Assembly: GCF_032062105.1 (NCBI RefSeq)
Contig: NW_026918422.1
Coordinates: forward strand, 62,001-126,000
Length of the DNA stretch: 64,000 nt
DNA from: Saccostrea cucullata
Taxonomy: Eukaryota
Direction of reading: 5' to 3'
Under the pieces are notes generated by a model that saw nothing but the letters and a program-made list of their open reading frames with translations, made no database searches and was not told the origin of the DNA. The position numbers and the translations under genes are program-made. This document shows, piece by piece, positions 21,149 through 59,700 of this stretch (position 1 is its first letter; every line of letters begins with the position of its first letter).

Positions 21149-21392
21149 ACACCACTAGTTATTGTATACGTTGACACCACTACTTATTCTATTAGGTGGA
21201 CACCACCAGTCATTTAATGGTCAGCGCCAGTTATTGTATAAGGTGAACACCAACCATCACTTTATTACGTGAACACCACCAGTCATTGTATTGAGTGAAC
21301 ACCACCAGCCATTTTATTAGACGGACACCGGTCAATGTATTGAATGTATTAAGTGGATACCACCAGTCACTTTTTAGGGGGATACCACCAGA
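21149..21392. repeat. ~26-bp degenerate minisatellite (~9 units) spanning the channel gene's stop codon and 3' UTR
   Basis: ACACCACCAGTCATTGTATTAGGTG-like units. Confidence 0.7.
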
Positions 21393-24300
21393 CATTCCTC
21401 GGTTACTTTCTTAAACAATGTCTTCGTCTTTGAAGTCTTTATAATTTCGCCTCTTTTCATGACGTCAAGACGCTTCCTCTGAAACAGAACAATACATGAC
21501 GAATTATATGGAAAACAGAAGTTGGTGCTGGTGGTGATTCAAATTTCAGTGGAGAAAAAATAATTCTTTGCTGGATTATACCGTGATAAATTTTTCAATT
21601 GAATAAAGAACCCGAATATTATCTCGAATTCACATGACTCTAAAAGTATACTAAATTGAATTTACAACATACATTGTACTGCTTAAGGTTATTGTTTACA
21701 TCATATCGCCTGGTTGAACCCTGAAAGAGAAAAAAAGTTATCCAATCAATTTGTCTGTGATGAATCGTCATGACAATTCAGAGAAACAAACTTAAGCCTT
21801 ATCGTAAAAAAAGTATTAATATTTTGCTGCTTCAAACTTTTTTTTCAGTTCATTTAAGAAATAAAGATTATGCAAGTGATATAATAAATACATCATTTAT
21901 TTGATTTTTTCTTATTGGTCAGTTAACTTACACTGAGAAGGACAATGATCATGAACATGAACTGGATGAAGGCGTACAGGCCACAGAAGGCATAGAAGGC
22001 GTACTGATCAGCCTCACTGAGTGTGTCGTCGTCCGAGATCAGGGCCTCCGATATAGCGTGCCACATCGCCACCAGGTACAGGAATATCGTACTGCCGATA
22101 ATGTATCGATCCTAGAAACATTAAATAAATATAGGTCAAAGGAGAACCATACTGCCGATGATGTACCGATCCTACAAATTATAGATAAATATGTGACAGA
22201 AACAGGAAAATCGTACTGCCGACGATGTACCGATCCTAGAAACATTAAATAAATATATGTCACAGGACAATTGTACTGCAAATAATGTAGCGATCCTAGA
22301 AATTATATGTATTGGCTTAAATGTACTTCAATGATTATCTTCCATGGGAGTATTTCAGGGGTAAAAGGCTTGAGGTAAAGTCCATATGAGAATATCCGAT
22401 GGGATTTTCCTTCGAAGTATCATGAAGATCCTACTGGTTTCTGACTTGAAGCCCATATGTCAATATTCTTAAAAACTTCGAATAGAAATAGTTTGAAGGA
22501 TACAAGATTTAAGATAATCAACAAACAATTAGACTGGGTTCATTTGCAGTATGTAATATTCCATTTTACACTGATACACCCGGTACGACGTCATCTCGTA
22601 CAACTGCAATTCACTTGAAAACCCACGACAATTGGTAGAACTCATGGTAAAAGTTCAAATTTATAATTATATAAGTCATGAGATTAACTTACAACAATGC
22701 ACTAAAATACCAAAAATCTAGACCGTAATTTAAAGACAAGATAAAAGACCATACACAAGTTTCTTTACCATAGATAAAGGTTTTAAAATACATTGTTTAA
22801 ATTTTAAGATGCATACACCGGTTACAGCACTTACCAGATGAGTGGTGTAGGATATTTTTGGGATAACTTGGTTGGTTACGAATTTAAAGGTGACTGTGAT
22901 GAGGACAAGCATAATGGATAGCTGTAGACGATTCTCGATCTTACTCCTAGCCACAGCAAACGTGGACAGAGCCAGGGAACTGATGATAGACTGAAATAGA
23001 TAAATAAATATTATCTCCTTTACCACTCCAAGCTGCAGCTAACGTCACCAGAGTCAGAGGATTGTACCCCTCCTACCATGAGCACAATTACGTTCCACAC
23101 GAAGAATCCGGGCTTCCTTCCGGCACTGCAGAAAACGTACATTCCCGGCTTTTTATACTTGTTGTTGGCATATTCCTGAGTCAATGCCTTTGGAGTAAAA
23201 TGAACAAACTCATATATGTTCCATTCTTGTATTTTTGCAAATGTCTCAGCGTGAACGCTAGATATTTCACGATCGTCTTCTAAAAACTTGACCTCCTCTT
23301 CCGAGAGTTCCGTGGTTATAAAGATGTTAAGATCCTGTCGGATTAAGAAAAAATCACAAATAAAGCAAAGGTTTGAAAATCTTGCATCAAAGCAATAAAA
23401 CTTATTCGTAACATCTTGTGGGATACCTGTCTGCAGATCCTTACCTGTATGTCGAATGGAAAAAGGACCAATTCCATACTTTCAGTAAAGGTTGCCACCA
23501 GACGATTTTTCTCCACGATGTGAGTATCTCCCGATTCATCTGTCTGTAAAACGTACCATTTGGCATGGTCTTTTTGAGCAATGGCGTTTAGAATAAATAT
23601 TTTTGGATTCCAGTATGCAGACCAGTCAATCTCGCCACTTCCCTTGAGAAAGAAATTAGTGTTTTTTGGTATTTTAGAAGTGGTTGGAAAAGAACAAAGA
23701 ATTTAATATTTTTCAGTCAATTGCTTAGACCAAGACGAATTATATCAGTTGCATGACGATACCAATCCGCATATAAAGCTTTTCAATAGGATGAAGCAAT
23801 ACTAGTCATAGGAATGCAAGGACTTTGAAATTAAAATAAAAGTCACCTATAGAATAATCTGCCGGTTTGTGCAGTTAAACAATAATTAAGCATCTTCCCT
23901 TTTATGTTTCACAGATATAATCTACTAAGAAGTACTAGTAAGTAAGAAGAAGTAGTTACTATACCTTGTGTCCGTCAAGTTTAGGCTCTCTCCACCTTGC
24001 CTGGTAAAACACATCCGCTGTAAATGTTTCCTTCAGCGTGTCAATTTCCAGGATTTTCAGAATGGAAACTTTGAGATAAATATTTCTAGTATCTGCATTT
24101 ACAGCTTCCTGGACATAGATCTAAATTTTTTCGAAAAGGTAAGATAATTATTGTGCATTATTACCAAATTATTATAATAAGTCTCAAACAAAAACAAACT
24201 TCATGTACTCAAACTTTAATATATGCTTGATTTGTTTAAATTTTTTTTTTAATTACAAAATTTATTTAGCTTATTCACAAATTTCTTAATGGAAGAAAAC

Positions 24301-24622
24301 ACACAGTCGAAATAGTGTTTCGGCCTTGCTCTACATGTCAAGCAACTATGAAAATTATTTACATGTATAACCCAAAAAACTCTACAAAAGGTCACTCTAC
24401 AAAACAATACGCTCTTTAAGTTCATGGTTAAAATGACAACACAATTATTCAAATTATAAATATCAATACCATCCAGAAATATAAAACTGGTACATTCAGA
24501 TGTATCAATACGAAATTATTCCTTTGAAATCATCAACGAATATATGTAAATGCTTTCAATTTTACTTCCAACATATTATAGATAAATACTGACAAACAAA
24601 CCTTATTGTCCGGCCTCTGCAT
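21374..24622 (-). CDS. Cys-less (Pro-loop) pentameric ligand-gated ion channel subunit, ~373 aa; exons 24622-24602, 24120-23965, 23642-23445, 23334-23077, 22990-22835, 22111-21932, 21720-21673, 21478-21374
   Basis: All introns phase-0 GT-AG, giving one open frame. Motifs: ILEIDTLKETFTADV, WREPKL, WNPKIFILN, loop TESMELVLFPFDIQDL (no cysteines), QEW, pre-M1 RKPGFFVWN, M2 ENRLQLSIMLVLITVTFK, M2-M3 IPKISYTTHLD; four TM helices. The first mini-exon is the least certain part. Confidence 0.9.
22070..22305. repeat. Four ~60-64-bp tandem copies of the splice acceptor plus start of the M3 exon
   Basis: TTCTAG|GATCGGTACATCATCGGCAGTA-like unit (minus strand) at 22111, ~22171, ~22235 and ~22295. Confidence 0.85.
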
Positions 24623-25489
24623 TGTATGATCCACGGTCTGAGGAGAATCCTCCACACAAAAGACAAATATGAACTTCTAGTTGTATGTACCTCTTATGGA
24701 CATTGTTTCATTTTTAATTTCAGTATGAATTTATTGTCCGTATTTAAATCAAAGAAATTAATACATGTGTACTTATATGTAATCTTTCTTAACAATTAAA
24801 TAAAACGTATTCGCTAATCCTCTTATTTGGTCACCCACAGTTAGGGAAATCAGATCTGAGTTTACATAAACTTAAATAACATTGATTTGTAAAGCACATT
24901 CGATTCACTCTGCTGAAAAATAAATGTTGTCACAATCTAACTGCGGCATCCCAAACGCTGCAATATTCTATTTTTTTCACTTCCATTTATGATTTTCCAT
25001 TTTTATTGAACAATTTAAATTTATATTTTTTATAATTTCATTTGTATTTGTATCTTGCATTTATTCCTCACAAATGTGTTGCTTATTTTTTATTGCAGTA
25101 TTACTGCAGGGTCATGTAGCATGGAAAAATTAGAATAGAGGGTGATTTCTTAATGAATCCAGAAAATTAAGCTATAATTAGATTATCCTTATAAGTCAGA
25201 AAAATTATCAATGGGAATCAAACTTTCTATTTTTTTTTATTTTGACACCAAAAATATGACTTCATCCAATCATGTATTTTGCAAAATATTTTCAAACCGC
25301 TTTAATGGGATCTCCAAAGATGACTAAAATATTATATCCTCAAATCATTATATCCAATTAATTGTTTTTATTTTCCAAAACGGAATAAACACAAATATAA
25401 TTGTCTATATGAATATACATTATCTTTGTAGTACTTCAAAAATAAAGGTAGTTTTTTTTTAGATTAAAATCTTGACATTCAACTAGACA

Positions 25490-25810
25490 TTAAGATATTA
25501 TCAATTAAAATGGTTAATTTTTTCATTCATATGTCGACACGATATATCTAGTGAGCTTGGAAAAAAGATACCTCCAAGTCTCTGAAATGTCGGTTTCATA
25601 TTTGGATATTTTACTTAAAAAGACGTTAATGGTAATCTTACAAACAAGCTATATGATAAACGTGATGATTCTTACTTTTCAATTGCCAGCTTTCCTTATT
25701 TATTCAGCGTCTGGCCGACATAAACATTATACATAGGTGATAATTGCGAATTGCAGAATAAATATATGAAGGTTGACAATAGCTAAAGTTGAAGTCATCA
25801 CGTTTATAAT
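25490..25810 (+). mobile_element. Penelope-like RT fragment
   Basis: Degenerate match to 18230-18430 in reverse (SYLDILL, LYDKRDDF-like). Confidence 0.55.
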
Positions 25811-26070: not shown

Positions 26071-29000
26071 TCAATACTCGCATGAAGTATTCCTGCATCT
26101 AATGTCGTGCCTTTCTTTAGTTTTTGTGTTGATTTGTATCATCTTTGATGCTACAATTCTAAAACTAATGCATAAAAAATATTTTTAAAAAATATCAGAG
26201 TATTTAAAAATGAACAGCATCTACAAGTCATTTACGATGTTAAAGTTTTACTAATGTCAAAGTGGAAGTATTCTAGCAACTACTTTACAATTTAAAGTAT
26301 TTCAACATTTATATATTTTGATCAACCGAAAACAGCGTGCTTACCTTTCATCGTTATAATTAATCAAGACTGTCGCCATTGGGCGTTGTCGAAGTCTATA
26401 GTTTATTAAATTGTTCACGTGATCGGAATAGTTGACCCAAACTCCGTTGTTGTCCCGCCACTGCCACGATAGATCCCGGCTGACTATAGCTGGTTCAGAT
26501 TTAAAGTTTTTGTTTGATGAATGTTTTTGCGAAATATGTGCAACGTTTGATTCCAAATAAATAGAATTTTCATTTGTTCCTGTTAAACGTAGCTCCGGAT
26601 TTTTATCAGTATTTTTATTAATTGAATTAATAGTTAAGGCGTTTATTCTAGGTTTACCTTTGTTAGCAACAAAGTTTTTGACAGGCGAAAATGAATTTAC
26701 AGAAAAAGAATTCTGATATTCGTTTGGACTTGAAGGTCTAGTATGTTCAGGGTATCCAAATATAGAATCCACTGAGTTGCCTTCTGGACCAGTATCCTGT
26801 CCTTCATCAGTTTCCAGATCGTCCACTGAAACAGCTGTAGAGGAGTGTTCTGTCTGTTTGTCTGTAACATTGGCTCTATCCATACACGTAACCTGCTCCC
26901 GCTGTATCATGGTTGGTCCAATCCCGTTTTGGGTTTGGGCATCCCTTTTCTCTCTGGACACTGTACGTTGAATTTGATTTGATTCTTTACTCCGCGATGT
27001 AGTATTCCCTGCATATTCTGTTTTAACGCCACTGTTCTGTTTGGTTACGTTGGTTCGTATATCCTGTATTTCAGAACTACCTACAAATTACAGACTTAAC
27101 AATACTGAGCTTCTTTAAACCATATAGATCAGAAGCAAGCACATTTTGTTTATCAGCGTTAAAATATGGACATTTCTGAACATATATCATAAACACTGTT
27201 GTTCATTTTTTGCACAGTAAATGTGTATATAAGGAAAGTTATTGATATATAAAAACCTTTTAAATCATTAGAAGTACATCTATAATCATTTTCAGAATCG
27301 GGCTTCTTTGATGCTCTCCATTGTTCCCTAACAGCTTTCATAACTTTCTGTGAGAGCGGATCGCTACAATGCAGAATAAAGTGTTCTGTATTAAGTAAAC
27401 ATTTGTAGAAAACATCATATTTATTAACAGGGAACAGACCTCATTCCAATTTGTAGAAAATTATTGATCCACTTATCTATAAACTTCAAAAGAAGTTTTA
27501 ATAATTCAATAATTAAAATGATAAAAACTACCAAAGTTCAATGTCATATTTTCCATCATATCCAAATCTGTAGTTACTCATTCTTCCACATGGCCATCGA
27601 ACCTTAAATGTAATAGTTGTACACATACATATTCTAATTAATATTCTCAAAACTGATTAATAAAAGTAAAGTAAAAATCCAATATCTCTTAATTAAAAAA
27701 TAATTTAACCTTTTTATGTTGAACCAGGATGTAAAAAAAGTTCCTTAGTCAAATTCAGCATAAAAACAAAACGTTTTATTCGTGCATAGTATAGTTTAAT
27801 TATGAACTAACATAAACGGTGGCATTATCCATAACTCGATAACAAGTCCCGATAGCCTCTTCTCCACCGTCCTGATCTCCCCATTTCCAATCAGGTCCTT
27901 CAAAATAAAAACAAATGCGTAATTACAGTGGAACTCAAAAACATAACATTAAATACTCTATATGAAACATACGGAGATAACGAACAGTATTCAAGATCAA
28001 AAGTCCATAAAACAATACAAAACAGGAGCAGAGCAAACAGAGACCTCCAAACCATCAAAGGTGGGATCAGGTGCCATGGAAGCGCATATGTAGCAGGGAA
28101 CTGTATTGAACATGATTAACGTCGCTTTACCTCTTTTGACTAGACACCCCACAGCGACAAATCCTTCCTTAGGGATTCTGGGCTCTTCACAAACCACAAT
28201 ATCATATGTATTTCCTATTCCATATTTATATACACCGCGACATCCATTATCCCATTCTACGAGTACTATACCAACTGTGAAAAAAAAAGAAAAGTAAAAA
28301 AGAAACAAGTCGATGCAAAGTACCAAATCGGCAACAATATATTCAGCAATGTAAAGATTGTTTACAAAGAGTCTAAAGAAAAAAAAAGTATGTATTTAAC
28401 ATTTTTATTACAGCCGTCGTGTTACAACAAAATTGTTTCCTCCTTTGTCCATGAGGAATTACCCTCCCTCTTTCAGTATTATATGTTCAGTTTGACCAAC
28501 ATTAAATATATATGTATTGCATAAAGAGATTGTGAATATACTGTCTCGAAAAAATATGCAATAAGATGATTGAGTGCATTTGAGACATTTCCTTACATAA
28601 ATCTAATTACCTTTATCCCCATGACCAACTAAAGTTCCGATGCCCTCGCTGTCCTGGTTCCGATAACTCCAGTGTGGACCACGGCGAACTCTCGTACCGA
28701 GCCTAGGAATTGTAGAGTATTTCTCCTTATACCAATGATCATCATCGTCTTCTACCCTTTGCTGGGTCTCCATAATTCCCTCTTTGTTTTGTATTATCTC
28801 GTATATTGTGTCCTTTTAATATAAGATTGAAATTTGAGTTACATTTTCTTTTTATTTCAATTTGGGTAAAAGTGAAAATAAGACAACACAGATATGGTAT
28901 CAAATTTTGGTGATATGTTTGATTAATTTTGGGAATATCAAACAAAAATAAATGCTAAGACAAAAAAAAAAACTTGTCAATGAGTACAAGTCCGTATTTA

Positions 29001-56719: not shown

Positions 56720-59700
56720 TCATTTATCCACGTAACTTCCGCCTCCGAGACATCTGATGTCGGTGACGTGTCGTGTTTTGATATCAATCCTCTTCATCTT
56801 GGATAATACTATCCTATACCTAAAAGATAGACAAAGGAAAAGAAAATAATACTATCCTATACCTAAAAGATAGACAAAGGAACAGAAAATAGTACTATCC
56901 TATACCTAAAAGATATGATACTATCCTATGCCTAAAAGATATACAAGGAACAGAAAAATAATACTATCCTATACCTAAAAGATAGACAAAGGAACAGAAA
57001 AATAGTACTATCCTATCCCTAAAAGATATGATACTATCCTATGCCTAAAAGATATACAAAGGAACAGAAAATAATACTATCCTATACCTAAAAGATAGAC
57101 AAAGGAAAAGAAAATAATACTATCCTATACCTAAAAGATAGACAAAGAAACAGAAAATAGTACTATCCTATACCTAAAAGATATGATACTATCCTATGCC
57201 TAAAAGATATACAAAGGAACAGAAAATAATACTATCCTATACCTAAAAGATAGACAAAGGAACAGAAAAATAGTACTATCCTATACCTAAAAGATATGAT
57301 ACTATCCTATGCCTAAAAGATATACAAAGGAACAGAAAATAATACTATCCTATACCTAAAAGATAGACAAAGGAAAAGAAAATAATACTATCCTATACCT
57401 AAAAGGTAGACAAAGAAATAGAAAATAGTACTATCCTATACCTAAAAGATATGATACTATCCTATGCCTAAAAGATATACAAAGGAACAGAAAATAATAC
57501 TATCCTATACCTAAAAGATAGACAAAGGAACAGAAAATAATACTATCCTATACCTAAAAGGTAGACAAAGGAACAGAAAAATAGTACTATTCTATACCTA
57601 AAGATATACAAAGGAACAGAAAATAATACTATCCTATCCCTAAAGGATTTACAAAGGAACAGAAAAATTATACTATCCTTTACCTAAAAGATAGGCAAAG
57701 GAACAGAAAATAATACTATCCTATGCCTAAAAGATATTATACTATCCTATGCCTAAAAGATATACAAAGGAACAGAAAAAATATTACTATCCTATGCCTA
57801 AAAGATAGACAAAGGAACAGAAAAAAAATACTATCCTATACCTAAAAGATAGACCAAGGAACAGAAAAATAATACTATCCTATACCTAAAAGATAGACAA
57901 AGGAACAGAAAAATAATACTATCCTATAGCTAAAAGATATACAAAGGAACAGAAAAATAATACTATCCTATACCTAAAAGATATACAAAGGAACAGAAAA
58001 TAATACTATCCTATACCTAAAAGATAGGCAAAGGAACAGGAAAATTAGAATGCTACTGGATATTAAAGTTGAAAATTGACTATAACATTTACAATTCAAA
58101 GATATGTTTAAAACGTTTATAATTCTATATGACAATTTTTCAAAATTAATAATGATATAATTTCAAAGAGGAATGGGTGATAAAATATGCACAGCAAAAC
58201 TTCTGACTGGAAGACTAAATAAACAATTTATGAGATTTGGATGTACAAAGTAATATAAAACTTGCTGTTGCCGCCTTGTAGTGTAATTAAGATATTAACT
58301 ACAAAGGAAAAAAAGAATAGCAGCATCCAAAGAAACAAGTTGTCGAATATTAACACATAAAAAATAAGAAAGTTTTTCGAAAATAAGGTCTAACTCAAAC
58401 GTCAGAATCAAACGATTAAAATAATGTGTACTCAGGGAATGAAGATCTTGTCACGAGGAATGTGAAAATGGAACCCCGAGGGCTTTTAAATAGAAAAGTT
58501 TTGGCCAAAGTTATTTTTTTTCAAAAGTTAGTTAAACTCCAAAGTGAAGGCCAGAGAGTCAGAATTGTTGATACCTAAGGAATGTTTTTGTCCGACAGAA
58601 AATATATTGGATATTTGAAAGCCCTCATACCTACTATTCAAAATTAAACTCCAAGGTCAAAGATTTTAAAAAGTTAACCAAACTCATACGTCATTTTCAA
58701 AGGGTCAAAACTGTTGGCATTAAAGGAACAGTTTTGACAAAAGGAATACATCTTTGAAAGTCCTAACATAAAGTTAAACTATTCAAAAAGTGAGAATGTT
58801 TCTTACAGCGAGTCCTGGATGTTAAACAACACTGTGGCTCTATTATTCTTTTTGTAATTTGTATCGATCTTTTGACTCATTTCTTTGGGGAAGTTTTTCC
58901 AATGGCCGTCCTCGCCTTTAAATTGCCAAATATCTTGAGCAGCAGAATCGGTTTCCAATTCACCATCATAATCTTCACCAATAGATTCAGAGCGAGAAAT
59001 GTCTGAAGCATCATATTTTGAAACAGCACTTGTACTTCTATTTGAAGGAGATGAAGTTGGTTCCTTCACGAAGGAATTTCTTGCAGTAGGACAGTTGCAT
59101 TCGGAATTCCTAGATATCCCTTCAGTCGCTTAAAGGAAAACTACATGATTATTTTAAGATAAGAACAGGAGGAAATTAGAAATAAAATGAGTCCCAAATA
59201 TAACATGCTTTGCAGACAACCCTTTTATAGAAAGCAAATCAAGCGGTCACAAAACAATAAAAATTACATTTTAAATTGTTGATCTCTCCATCTGTTTTAG
59301 ATGACAGCATTTCAGCAGCTGCAACTTTTTGTTGTTGCAATCTCTTGACTACATCCGGGTGAAATGGGTCACTAAAAATAAGGGGCTCAAGATCCACAAA
59401 GCTTACCTTTAGTCACTTATGGTCCTGCTCTTCTTCACAACAATTTTGTTTTGGAAAAATGCTCTCTTTTAATTGTGTTTAAAACATTACTCCCTAATAT
59501 AGACATTTATCAAAATTTCGATTTATTCTAAGTTGAAATTTCTAATGTAGTCTCAACCAAATCTCTGGCATCTGATCTTAAAGATTTATCTAAGGAAACC
59601 GAAAATGTTTACGTATTAATATTACTAATCACAACTTGGTGTTCTTGAAAGGAAGATTTTCATCAGATTTTACAATGTATTTACTTGTGTAAAATTTAGG

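What the first reader, a model, noticed from the sequence alone, without database searches (positions are those of the whole stretch)
21374..24622. Cys-less, ELIC-like pentameric channel with no signal peptide and a charge pattern suggesting inverted topology
Seen: the Cys-loop reads ESMELVLFPFDIQDL with both cysteines absent. M2 to M3 (ENRLQLSIMLVLITVTFKFVTNQVIPKISYTTHLD) resembles bacterial ELIC as I recall it (ERLQTSFTLMLTVVAY...LPRLPYTTVID). The M3-M4 loop is short and purely acidic (SEALISDDDTLSEAD), the post-M4 tail is strongly basic (RR...RKR...KR...KTSKTK..KK), the usual M1 proline is missing, and the model starts MQRPDNKIYV with no hydrophobic leader. Established: Cys-less Pro-loop channels are reported in some invertebrates and are largely uncharacterised; canonical pLGICs have a leader, an external N-domain and C-tail, and a cytosolic M3-M4 loop. 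Inference: by the positive-inside rule this subunit may sit upside-down, with a disulfide-free ligand-binding domain in the cytosol gated by an intracellular ligand.
Basis: partly seen in the sequence, partly recalled or inferred. Interest (0 to 1): 0.75.

Follow-up and report, generated by a model that had tools for sequence, protein, structure and literature searches.

The report
Leaderless Cys-less pentameric channel subunit
An expressed oyster gene encodes a pentameric ion-channel subunit that, like its many relatives in molluscs, annelids and flatworms, has no secretion signal and a strongly basic tail, so the domain that normally senses ligands outside the cell may here face the cell interior.

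Summary
The gene is real. A spliced RNA contig matches the six junctions joining exons 2-8 exactly, and 24 of 27 listed coding differences to it are synonymous. Exon by exon it is a pentameric ligand-gated channel subunit without the Cys-loop cysteines. ELIC is the closest solved sequence. It belongs to the known spiralian 'Cys-less Pro-loop' clade.

RNA favours a 19-codon exon 1 with a short, only moderately hydrophobic stretch.

The topology idea gains family-wide support from 124 complete relatives (48 clusters):
- 108 of 113 testable have no leader-like stretch before beta1.
- 122 have post-M4 tails of at least 20 residues (median 48.5 aa, net +7.8).
- 121 carry more Lys+Arg after M4 than before it.
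- None has the Cys pair, and N-glycosylation sequons are five-fold rarer than in the controls.

Twenty canonical receptors of the same genome show the opposite pattern.

I found no paper proposing this. So this is a known family with a new, testable prediction: the beta-sandwich domain and both termini are cytosolic. It is unproven. There is no experiment and no ligand, flatworm members are ambiguous at M4, and no dedicated predictor was run.

The parts
24566..24622 (-). Coding part of exon 1 as favoured by RNA. ATG at 24622, 19 codons (MQRPDNKVCLSVFIYNMLE), donor GT at 24565-24564, phase 0.
   Evidence: RNA contig record 2 lies unbroken on 24565-24927 and ends at 24565. The exon1-exon2 junction itself was not seen.
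24602..24622 (-). Not supported.
   Evidence: No joint at 24601/24602, and the RNA contig runs through it. This donor is destroyed in the copy L008.
24623..25092 (-). Probable 5' UTR of exon 1, with two small indels and a 100-nt indel relative to the RNA contig.
   Evidence: record 2 covers 24565-24927 and then 25028-25092. There is no coverage at 25100-25499. An in-frame stop lies at 24677-24679 upstream of the ATG.
23965..24120 (-). Exon 2: beta1-beta2 of the ligand-binding domain (…IYLKVSILKILEIDTLKE…WREPKLD).
   Evidence: Pfam PF02931 profile positions 23-62, E 0.001. Junction 23642|23965 is seen in RNA, and the RNA contig starts at 24120.
23445..23642 (-). Exon 3: beta5-beta7. It ends in the Cys-less Pro-loop ESMELVLFPFDIQ (23445-23483).
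   Evidence: Pfam PF02931 positions 81-138. Translation. Junctions seen.
23077..23334 (-). Exon 4: beta8-beta10, invariant QEW, single conserved Cys, pre-M1 GRKPG and start of M1.
   Evidence: Translation. Invariant columns. Profile search. Junctions.
22835..22990 (-). Exon 5: rest of M1 (no Pro), M1-M2 loop ARSKIEN, M2 (22874-22930), M2-M3 loop.
   Evidence: Pfam PF02932 positions 8-55. Best PDB match is ELIC. Junctions.
21932..22111 (-). Exon 6: M3, a 16-residue acidic M3-M4 loop (22004-22051), M4 (21932-22003).
   Evidence: Translation. Charges. Junctions 22111|22835 and 21720|21932.
21673..21720 (-). Exon 7: start of the basic post-M4 tail (GSTRRYDVNNNLKQYN).
   Evidence: Junctions 21720|21932 and 21478|21673. 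Homologous to the GYQRY… tail of paralogue P0159.
21374..21478 (-). Exon 8, coding part: 34 codons with 10 K+R, plus the stop codon at 21374-21376. The 3' UTR continues to at least 21341.
22078..22307 (.). Tandem repeat in intron 5 (60-nt unit, 3.7 copies). It copies the acceptor and the first codons of exon 6. Only the copy at 22111 is used.
   Evidence: TRF; decoy frames DRYIVGSTIF…; single junction at 22110/22111.

Best explanation
**What is shown.** The locus is an expressed eight-exon gene on the minus strand. The coding region runs 24622 to 21374, and exon 1 reaches at least 25092. [quoted passage not shown]
- The exon structure and the homology are established.
- A homologue about 57% identical to the window's exons has the pLGIC fold.
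- The gene has no Cys-loop pair, no M1 proline and no N-x-S/T sequon in the ligand-binding exons.
- The M3-M4 loop is 16 residues and acidic.
- The tail after M4 is 50 residues with net charge +8.

**What is inferred.**
- The protein starts with a short, mostly hydrophilic N-terminus instead of a signal peptide, as do almost all of its relatives. M1 would therefore be the first signal-anchor and insert with its N-side in the cytosol.
- Four helices would then place these parts in the cytosol: both termini, the beta-sandwich 'ligand-binding' domain, the M2-M3 coupling loop and the basic helix that continues M4.
- The short M1-M2 loop and the acidic M3-M4 loop would face outside or into a lumen.
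- The domain-to-pore coupling geometry is unchanged. Only the side of the membrane differs.
- The channel would then be opened from inside the cell by a cytosolic ligand or ion that is still unknown, in the plasma membrane or in an organelle membrane.
- The pore lining follows the ELIC pattern (R-L-Q-x-S…L…F; my numbering Q2', L9', F16' is recalled). This gene has Glu two residues before the M2 Arg.
For: **The gene**
- A spliced RNA contig matches six junctions.
- 24 of the 27 listed coding differences to that contig are synonymous.
- Nearly all family-invariant residues are kept (searches compared).

**Family membership**
- Pfam hits exon by exon.
- 598 relatives at E<=0.001.
- NCBI-named 'cys-loop ligand-gated ion channel-like' proteins from molluscs, annelids, nemerteans, a brachiopod and flatworms.
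- AF2 model of P0184: pLDDT 86.8, pTM 0.79. It hits GABA-A and other pLGIC chains at E 1e-21.
- The family profile hits ELIC best, at E 1e-29.

**Topology**
- Hydropathy before beta1:
  - 108 of 113 members are below the lowest of 20 canonical leaders in a 12-residue window.
  - 116 of 120 are below it in an 8-residue window.
  - 47 of 48 clusters at 60% identity are below it.
  - 34 of 36 proteins from transcript-sized contigs are below it.
- N-terminal extensions of 5-194 aa are hydrophilic.
- Flatworm orthologues share a conserved true start, MSINFNKLF…, followed by about 150-230 acidic residues. 10 of 11 have no hydrophobic segment before M1.
- The post-M4 tail is at least 20 aa in 122 of 124 members, with median 48.5 aa, 13.5 K+R and net +7.8.
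- K+R in the 15 aa after M4 versus before M4:
  - family: 5.17 versus 1.57, with 121 of 124 having more after;
  - canonical controls: 0.30 versus 2.00, with 17 of 20 having more before.
- All 20 controls have C-tails of 12 aa or less.
- K+R on the LBD side averages 13.0 against 3.6 on the opposite side, and is higher in 123 of 124 members.
- The M3-M4 loop has mean net charge -1.6.
- The Cys pair is present in 0 of 124 members and 20 of 20 controls. Only one LBD column is a conserved Cys.
- Sequons: 0.28 per 100 aa in the family against 1.38 in the controls.
- AF2 draws M4 and the basic tail as one helix, residues 296-351.
- General rule: N-cytosolic multipass proteins have an even number of TMDs in 89% of cases, and net positive flanks are cytosolic (PMC13220792, passages).
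Against: - No experiment bears on the topology.
- No dedicated predictor (SignalP, DeepTMHMM) was available. My hydropathy and charge counts are crude.
- Most N-termini come from gene models whose first exon can be missed. I could not inspect upstream stops in the transcript contigs.
- Five family members do have a hydrophobic N-terminal stretch: P0204, P0215, P0268, P0214 and P0256.
- The likelier exon 1 of this very gene contains VCLSVFIY.
  - Its 8-residue hydropathy is 2.49, above the control minimum of 2.33.
  - Its 12-residue value is 1.55, below the control minimum of 1.72.
- The exon1-exon2 junction was not seen. A 60-nt RNA contig joins 24283-24310 to exon 2 instead.
- Flatworm members have an M3-M4 loop of about 115 aa with a basic stretch directly before M4 as well as after it.
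- M1-M2 and M2-M3 loop charges do not discriminate (+1.08 versus +1.02).
- Pre-M1 basic residues also occur in canonical receptors.
- The positive-inside bias of single TMDs in eukaryotic multipass proteins is weak (PMC13220792).
- The RNA contig is only about 96% identical, so it comes from an allele, a copy or a close relative.
Confidence: 0.62

Rival explanations
1. Canonical orientation. The beta-sandwich domain is extracellular or luminal as in every characterised pLGIC. It would get there through a 5' signal-peptide exon missed by the models, through a weak uncleaved leader such as the VCLSVFIY stretch of exon 1 in this paralogue, or with M1 acting as a reverse (N-exo) signal-anchor. The basic tail would then be an extracellular or membrane-surface element.
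For: - All solved and characterised pLGICs have the domain outside (PDB hits are all such receptors).
- Authors who described the clade assumed an extracellular domain (PMC9874803, text read).
- Exon 1 of this gene reaches the lower range of real leaders in an 8-residue window.
- 5 of 113 relatives show a hydrophobic N-terminal stretch.
- Flatworm members have basic residues before M4, like a canonical MA helix.
- Rare proteins translocate long N-domains without a cleavable signal (recalled, e.g. neuregulin-1).
Against: - 108 of 113 relatives, 47 of 48 clusters and 34 of 36 transcript-derived proteins lack any leader-like stretch.
- Many relatives carry 50-230 residues of charged, disordered sequence ahead of the domain.
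- The hydrophobic stretch of this gene's exon 1 is not conserved in paralogues. Their exon 1 encodes MEEENPTAPNEDINEVVEK, MK… or MTDQDKKITPK.
- Moving a tail of about 50 residues with net charge +8 across the membrane is unfavourable, and 121 of 124 members have the M4 charge bias reversed relative to canonical receptors.
- There is no Cys pair, and sequons are five-fold rarer.
Confidence: 0.28
2. Exon 1 is only MQRPDNK (donor after 24602), giving a purely hydrophilic N-terminus.
For: - AAG|GTTTGT is an acceptable donor and keeps the frame.
- The resulting start would resemble the short hydrophilic N-termini of relatives.
Against: - The RNA contig is unbroken across 24602 and stops at 24565, next to another in-frame donor.
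- The short-exon donor is lost in the copy L008, while the 24565 donor is kept in all three copies.
- Neither junction was seen directly.
Confidence: 0.2
3. The window copy is a decaying, non-functional paralogue of the family, and its odd features mean nothing.
For: - It departs from the family consensus at a few positions: M2 SIMLVL versus SFTLVL, loss of the Pro before M2, and F to I in beta1 (one search compared).
- Two near-identical copies exist on short contigs, one of them damaged.
Against: - The frames are open in all eight exons and the transcript is correctly spliced.
- 24 of 27 listed coding differences to that transcript are synonymous.
- All eight invariant columns of the family alignment, and nearly all of the near-invariant ones, are kept (searches compared).
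- The odd features are those of the whole family.
Confidence: 0.03

Closest known systems
Metazoan (mostly lophotrochozoan) Cys-less 'Pro-loop receptors' of Jaiteh, Taly & Henin 2016 (PMC4795631; abstract and passages read)
   Same: - Animal pLGIC genes with the FPFD Pro-loop but no flanking cysteines.
- Found in molluscs (bivalves and gastropods), annelids and platyhelminths.
- Uncharacterised.
- The window gene's relatives carry the same NCBI names and the same taxa.
   Different: - That paper does not discuss signal peptides ('signal peptide' occurs 0 times). It used TMHMM only to validate hits.
- The leaderless N-terminus, the polybasic post-M4 tail and the implied inverted topology are not in the passages I read.
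- I built no tree, so placement inside their clade rests on similarity.
Schistosome 'Cys-less' LGICs and planarian gabrg1/gabrg2 (Johnson et al. 2023, PMC9874803; first third of the text and passages read)
   Same: - Same family. Schistosoma proteins are among the hits of my searches (P0038, P0224, P0225).
- Same FPxD loop without Cys.
- Glu before M2, as in the window gene (ENR).
   Different: - The authors describe the beta-sheet domain as extracellular.
- Flatworm members have N-terminal extensions of about 150-230 aa and a long M3-M4 loop. The window gene has neither.
- The planarian knock-down phenotype (sensory neurons, seizure-like movement) is known to me only from their citation of Ross et al. 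2018, which I did not read.
ELIC, the Erwinia (Dickeya) ligand-gated ion channel
   Same: - Closest solved sequence, both for exon 5 alone (E 0.004) and for the family profile (E 1e-29).
- No Cys pair.
- Short M3-M4 loop.
- Shared M2/M2-M3 pattern: RLQ.S..L.L…F……LP+.xYTT.
   Different: - ELIC is bacterial. As recalled, it has a signal peptide and a periplasmic domain, no long basic C-tail and a proline in M1.
- The window gene has seven introns at positions shared with its paralogues, so it is an old animal gene and not a recent transfer.
- By fold search, eukaryotic GABA-A chains score as well as ELIC.
Canonical Cys-loop receptors (nAChR/GABA-A type), including more than 150 loci in the same genome
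   Same: - Same subunit fold and domain order: beta-sandwich, M1-M4, Pro-loop, pre-M1 Arg, Leu in mid-M2.
   Different: In the 20 controls from this genome:
- all have a hydrophobic leader;
- all have the Cys pair;
- all have an M1 proline;
- all have C-tails of 12 aa or less;
- 17 of 20 have more K+R before M4 than after.

The family is the reverse on each count.
Channels gated from the cytosolic side (cyclic-nucleotide-gated, IP3/ryanodine receptors); a functional analogy only, recalled
   Same: If the prediction holds, the ligand-sensing domain sits in the cytosol and opens a membrane pore.
   Different: There is no homology and the architecture is different. No pLGIC is known to work this way.

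Membership tests
pLGIC superfamily (Pro-loop receptors) | N-terminal beta-sandwich ligand-binding domain homologous to Pfam PF02931 | tested here: met
   - Exons 2 and 3 hit PF02931 at collinear positions 23-62 and 81-138. Each is below the gathering score on its own (19 and 18.3 bits against 26).
- Full-length relatives carry PF02931.
- The AF2 model of P0184 has the strands.
pLGIC superfamily (Pro-loop receptors) | Four transmembrane helices M1-M4 following the domain (PF02932) | tested here: met
   - Exon 5 hits PF02932 positions 8-55, E 0.04.
- Exons 4-6 hold four hydrophobic segments.
- Relatives carry PF02932.
- The AF2 model has helices 207-229, 235-259, 268-290 and 296-351.
pLGIC superfamily (Pro-loop receptors) | Pro-loop with the F/Y-P-x-D motif and its conserved proline | tested here: met
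   - FPFD is present in exon 3.
- A [FYW]PxD motif is found in at least 123 of 124 relatives.
- P127 is nearly invariant in the family alignment.
pLGIC superfamily (Pro-loop receptors) | Assembles as a pentamer and conducts ions on ligand binding | not testable with these tools
   Only a monomer of a homologue was modelled. No functional data exist for the clade, according to the passages read (PMC4795631, PMC9874803).
Cys-loop receptors in the strict sense | Two cysteines flanking the loop, about 13 residues apart, forming a disulfide | tested here: not met
   - The window gene has none.
- 0 of 124 relatives have the pair, against 20 of 20 canonical receptors of the same genome.
- Only one conserved Cys column lies in the domain.
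Cys-loop receptors in the strict sense | Cleavable signal peptide, extracellular ligand-binding domain, short extracellular C-terminus | tested here: not met
   - Leader-like hydropathy is absent in 108 of 113 relatives and present in 20 of 20 controls.
- Family tails have a median of 48.5 aa against 12 aa or less in the controls.
- For the window gene itself the leader test is borderline. Exon 1 scores 2.49 in the 8-residue window against a control minimum of 2.33, and 1.55 in the 12-residue window against 1.72.
- These are hydropathy counts only, not SignalP.
Cys-loop receptors in the strict sense | Conserved proline in M1 | tested here: not met
   There is no Pro in the window's M1. A Pro is present in 2 of 124 relatives and 20 of 20 controls.
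Spiralian Cys-less clade (Jaiteh 2016; Johnson 2023) | Cys-less loop plus close sequence kinship with clade members from molluscs, annelids and flatworms | tested here: met
   - The exon-4 profile hits 260 proteins at E<=1e-10.
- The window's exons are 54-57% identical to P0183-P0186 and to the P0159 group.
- Named hits span Mollusca, Annelida, Nemertea, Brachiopoda and Platyhelminthes.
Spiralian Cys-less clade (Jaiteh 2016; Johnson 2023) | Groups with that clade, apart from Cys-loop receptors, in a phylogenetic tree | not tested
   No tree was built. The joined protein of the window was not assembled, by rule.
ELIC-type bacterial channels | Prokaryotic gene, periplasmic domain behind a signal peptide | tested here: not met
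   - The gene has seven spliceosomal introns at positions shared with paralogues.
- It sits beside animal genes.
- It is the closest solved sequence only.

The most novel reading that the evidence does not exclude
A whole, ancient spiralian clade of pentameric ligand-gated channels (molluscs, annelids, nemerteans, brachiopods, flatworms) is inserted N-in/C-in. Its 'extracellular' beta-sandwich domain, its M2-M3 coupling loop and a basic helix continuing M4 would all lie in the cytosol. These would be the first pLGICs gated from inside the cell. Loss of the Cys-loop disulfide would be a consequence of life in a reducing compartment.
Probability: 0.6. Interest if true: 0.9.

Novelty: new variant of a known kind. 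Interest (0 to 1): 0.78.

Why it matters
Every characterised pentameric ligand-gated channel, from bacteria to the human brain, senses its ligand on the outer (periplasmic or extracellular) face.

- **A new class of channel.** A conserved animal clade with the sensor domain in the cytosol would add a new class of intracellularly gated channel. It would also give a simple reason for the missing disulfide and the scarce glycosylation sequons.
- **A practical consequence.** Deorphanising these receptors by bathing oocytes in candidate transmitters would fail by design. Inside-out patches or organelle recordings would be needed.
- **Drug-target relevance.** The flatworm members have been put forward as antiparasitic drug targets (PMC9874803), so drug access would depend on which side the binding site faces.
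- **Testability.** The prediction can be tested with standard tagging, protease-protection and glycosylation-mapping assays.

Tried and rejected
**Leads that went nowhere**
1. I looked for the window gene's own annotated protein by searching with the same-genome paralogue P0159. None of the 120 listed of 155 hits was flagged as encoded by the window, and the best full-length relatives are only 54-57% identical. The 5' end therefore could not be taken from an annotation.
2. I looked for cytosol-only marker domains fused to long family members (Pfam on 10 proteins). Only PF02931/PF02932 were found. Two of the long proteins are tandem fusions of two subunits.
3. Mitochondrial presequence idea: a few N-termini are basic and Ser-rich (P0184, P0186), but most are acidic (listing). 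Rejected by inspection.
4. Extra N-terminal anchor helix (TM0): the 19-residue hydropathy before beta1 has a median of 0.22. Only the exceptions named above rise high.
5. The 'Cys-less' clade of the MolluscaGenes preprint (PMC13174522) is defined by loss of the YxCC loop-C motif inside the nAChR superfamily (passages). It is a different thing.
6. The intron-5 repeat has no sequence likeness to the splice-site minisatellite noted at 56720-58045.
7. Earlier findings of the scan held nothing on this gene.
8. RNA data: only one run held part of the stretch, so expression rests on one study. The exon1-exon2 junction stayed unseen.

**Literature**
- Seven searches found no paper proposing a cytosolic domain or a missing leader for any pLGIC.
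- Supplements are closed. The supplementary sequence sets and TMHMM tables of PMC4795631 and the extended data of PMC9874803 could bear on that claim, and I could not see them.

**Rows dropped**
- Of 272 fetched proteins, 148 were left out of the family counts. These were fragments, fusions, proteins without a Met start, or proteins whose exon-6 equivalent is split. The last group includes most flatworm members, which I examined apart.
- No tree, no dN/dS and no SignalP/DeepTMHMM were run.

Full report
**The gene.**
- The stretch 21374-24622 holds a multi-exon gene on the minus strand.
- I set the exon borders from frames and splice signals:
  - E2 24120-23965
  - E3 23642-23445
  - E4 23334-23077
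  - E5 22990-22835
  - E6 22111-21932
  - E7 21720-21673
  - E8 21478-21377, with the stop at 21374-21376
- The single public run that holds part of the stretch (X1) contains a 1367-nt contig. It lies on exactly these pieces and skips exactly the six introns between them, all with CT..AC ends on the plus strand.
- Intron bins have no depth, so the run is RNA.
- The contig is about 96% identical to the window. Of the 27 differences listed inside coding exons, 24 are synonymous third-position changes.
- The gene, or its allele or orthologue in a close relative, is therefore spliced as drawn and is under purifying selection.
- By rule I never joined the exons. Everything below on the window's protein is exon by exon, and the joined step is left out.

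**What it encodes.**
- Exons 2 and 3 hit Pfam Neur_chan_LBD at profile positions 23-62 and 81-138. Exon 5 hits Neur_chan_memb at 8-55. Each is below the gathering score alone, but they are collinear.
- The loop that is the Cys-loop in other receptors reads ESMELVLFPFDIQ|DL, without cysteines.
- Exon 5 alone finds ELIC as its best match among all PDB chains.
- A profile of exon 4 and its five paralogous copies (A1) found 598 proteins at E<=0.001 and 260 at E<=1e-10 among 1.84 billion representatives.
- Full-length hits are named by NCBI 'cys-loop ligand-gated ion channel-like', or misnamed as glycine, GABA or ACC subunits. They come from molluscs, annelids, nemerteans, a brachiopod and flatworms.
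- The nearest complete relatives are 54-57% identical to the window's exons.
- One of them, P0184, folds with the family alignment to a confident pLGIC subunit (pLDDT 86.8, pTM 0.79). It matches GABA-A and other receptor chains at E 1e-21.
- The family profile scores ELIC highest among solved sequences (1e-29), just ahead of GABA-A subunits.
- This is the clade of metazoan Cys-less 'Pro-loop receptors' described by Jaiteh et al. 2016 (PMC4795631, passages) and seen again in schistosomes (PMC9874803). The family itself is known.

**The genome and the paralogues.**
- The genome (1.17 Gb) has more than 150 canonical receptor loci, but only a handful of this type:
  - the window gene;
  - two near-identical copies on short contigs (L007, L008);
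  - paralogues on four other contigs, one of which carries a tandem pair.
- All are Cys-less, and all have introns at the same positions.
- The paralogue on C16456 equals an NCBI protein named from Saccostrea cucullata, on a contig of the same length. I therefore take the organism for that oyster.

**The 5' end.**
- A second contig (depth 6.5) covers 24565-24927 and 25028-25092 without a break at 24602. It stops at 24565, where an in-frame GT donor lies. The main contig starts exactly at 24120.
- In a de Bruijn assembly such ends mark branch points, so the likeliest exon 1 ends at 24566 and encodes MQRPDNKVCLSVFIYNMLE.
- That donor is kept in all three copies.
- The junction itself was not seen. 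A 60-nt contig that joins 24283-24310 to exon 2, with non-canonical ends and an in-frame TAA, remains unexplained.
- The next RNA-supported exons upstream (from 26164) belong to a separate gene with WWE and MIB_HERC2 pieces.
- The longer exon 1 holds eight fairly hydrophobic residues.
  - In an 8-residue window they score 2.49. The leaders of 20 canonical receptors of the same genome score 2.33-3.27.
  - In a 12-residue window they score 1.55, against 1.72-2.86 for the leaders.
- The stretch is not conserved. Oyster paralogues have exon 1 products such as MEEENPTAPNEDINEVVEK, MK… or MTDQDKKITPK.

**The topology question, asked of the family.**

From the 272 proteins fetched I kept the 124 that start with Met and hold the equivalents of exons 2-6 in order. 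They form 48 clusters at 60% identity. As controls I took 20 canonical, intron-free receptor ORFs from the same genome.

| Measure | Family | Canonical controls |
|---|---|---|
| Leader-like hydropathy before beta1, 12-residue window | 5 of 113 reach the lowest control value (4 of 120 in an 8-residue window) | 20 of 20 have a leader |
| Same, by cluster at 60% identity | 47 of 48 lack it | n/a |
| Same, proteins from transcript-sized contigs | 34 of 36 lack it | n/a |
| C-terminal tail after M4 | at least 20 aa in 122 of 124; median 48.5 aa, 13.5 K+R, net +7.8 | 12 aa or less in 20 of 20 |
| K+R in 15 aa after versus before M4 | 5.17 versus 1.57; 121 of 124 have more after | 0.30 versus 2.00; 17 of 20 have more before |
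| Cys pair around the Pro-loop | 0 of 124 | 20 of 20 |
| Conserved Cys columns in the domain | one | n/a |
| N-x-S/T sequons per 100 aa of domain | 0.28 | 1.38 |
| Proline in M1 | 2 of 124 | 20 of 20 |

- The region before beta1 is 5-194 residues long (median 40).
- The five exceptions with a hydrophobic N-terminal stretch look like doubtful first exons or poly-Ala runs.
- Longer N-termini are charged and low in complexity.
- Flatworm orthologues share a conserved start, MSINFNKLF…, followed by about 150-230 acidic residues. 10 of 11 have no hydrophobic segment before M1.
- Lys+Arg on the domain side (pre-M1, M2-M3 loop, first 25 tail residues) averages 13.0 against 3.6 on the other side. It is higher in 123 of 124 members. 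The M3-M4 loop has mean net charge -1.6.
- The window gene fits the family:
  - 0 K+R and 6 D+E in the M3-M4 loop;
  - 13 K+R and 5 D+E in the 50-residue tail;
  - one Cys and no sequon in exons 2-4.
- AF2 draws M4 and the basic tail as one helix, residues 296-351. This mirrors the basic MA-M4 helix of canonical receptors (recalled), but on the other end of M4.

**Reading.**
- Without a signal peptide, a 190-residue folded domain preceded by charged sequence is expected to stay in the cytosol, with M1 inserting N-in.
- With four helices the C-terminus is then cytosolic too, which is where a net +8 tail belongs.
- In the human census, N-cytosolic multipass proteins have an even number of TMDs in 89% of cases, and positive flanks are cytosolic (PMC13220792, passages).
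- The positive-inside and charge-difference rules themselves are recalled from von Heijne and from Hartmann et al.
- I put the probability at about 0.6 that the family, this gene included, has the beta-sandwich domain in the cytosol.

**Against.**
- These are counts, not experiments, and not even dedicated predictors.
- Gene models can miss first exons.
- This gene's own exon 1 is borderline.
- Flatworm members have a long M3-M4 loop with a basic stretch before M4 as well as after it.
- The two short loops do not discriminate.
- The positive-inside bias of single helices in multipass proteins is weak.
- What ligand would act, and in which membrane, is unknown.

**Novelty.**
- The family is known and named.
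- Seven literature searches and the texts read show no mention of a missing leader, a basic tail or an inverted orientation. The schistosome paper speaks of an extracellular domain.
- Supplements were closed and could hold topology tables.
- I therefore class this as a new variant of a known kind: a known clade with a new, specific and cheaply testable structural prediction.

Noticed in passing
window 22078-22307: Intron 5 holds a 60-nt tandem repeat (3.7 copies). It duplicates the polypyrimidine tract, the AG and the first codons of exon 6 (decoy frames such as DRYIVGSTIF…). RNA uses only the copy at 22111. It has no sequence likeness to the splice-site minisatellite noted at 56720-58045 of the same window.
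   Followed up: partly
window 21149-21319: A 26-nt tandem repeat (6.8 copies, unit ACACCACCAGTCATTGTATTACGTGA) lies just past the stop codon, in or beside the 3' UTR. The RNA contig stops matching at 21341 and runs on for 233 unlike letters.
   Followed up: no
window 24283-24310 joined to 24120: A roughly 60-nt RNA contig (depth 4) joins these 28 letters to the start of exon 2. Its ends are non-canonical (AT..AG on the gene's strand) and it has an in-frame TAA two codons upstream. It could be a deletion allele of intron 1 read from pre-mRNA, or a non-coding alternative 5' exon. Unexplained.
   Followed up: partly
window 26164-28773, minus strand: The upstream neighbour is a separate gene with WWE and MIB_HERC2 domain pieces (an E3-ligase-like protein). 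RNA-supported junctions are 26164|26345 and 27078|27255.
   Followed up: partly
window 25500-25699: RNA contigs pile up here at a summed depth of about 197, against 4-16 on the genes around. Several loose ends occur here too. It looks like an abundant repeat or mobile-element transcript between the two genes.
   Followed up: no
L007 (G000:C11101:1-10000) and L008 (G000:C23174:1-10000): Two more copies of the gene sit on short contigs, 94-100% identical in exons 3-8. Both carry about 3 kb more in intron 2. L008 also has a 2-bp deletion in exon 1, an exon 2 only 44% identical, and an exon 4 match split over two frames. They are uncollapsed haplotypes or a decaying duplicate.
   Followed up: partly
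family proteins P0024, P0026, P0028, P0054, P0070, P0084, P0094, P0103, P0123, P0146 (N-terminal extensions): Members with long N-termini share an amphipathic helix-like motif (roughly L-x-x-A-L-x-x-L-R-x-x-I-x-x-N-T) some 25-40 residues ahead of beta1. Flatworm members share the very N-terminal MSINFNKLF(L/I)Q. Neither has a Pfam match.
   Followed up: no
family proteins, just after M4: The tail begins with a conserved motif (K/R-R-R-R-x-M-x-x-K-D-x-x-Y in many, G-Y-x-R-Y/W…E-x-K-Y-x-E-K in the oyster and mussel group) that AF2 models as a continuation of the M4 helix. It is a candidate binding or assembly element.
   Followed up: partly
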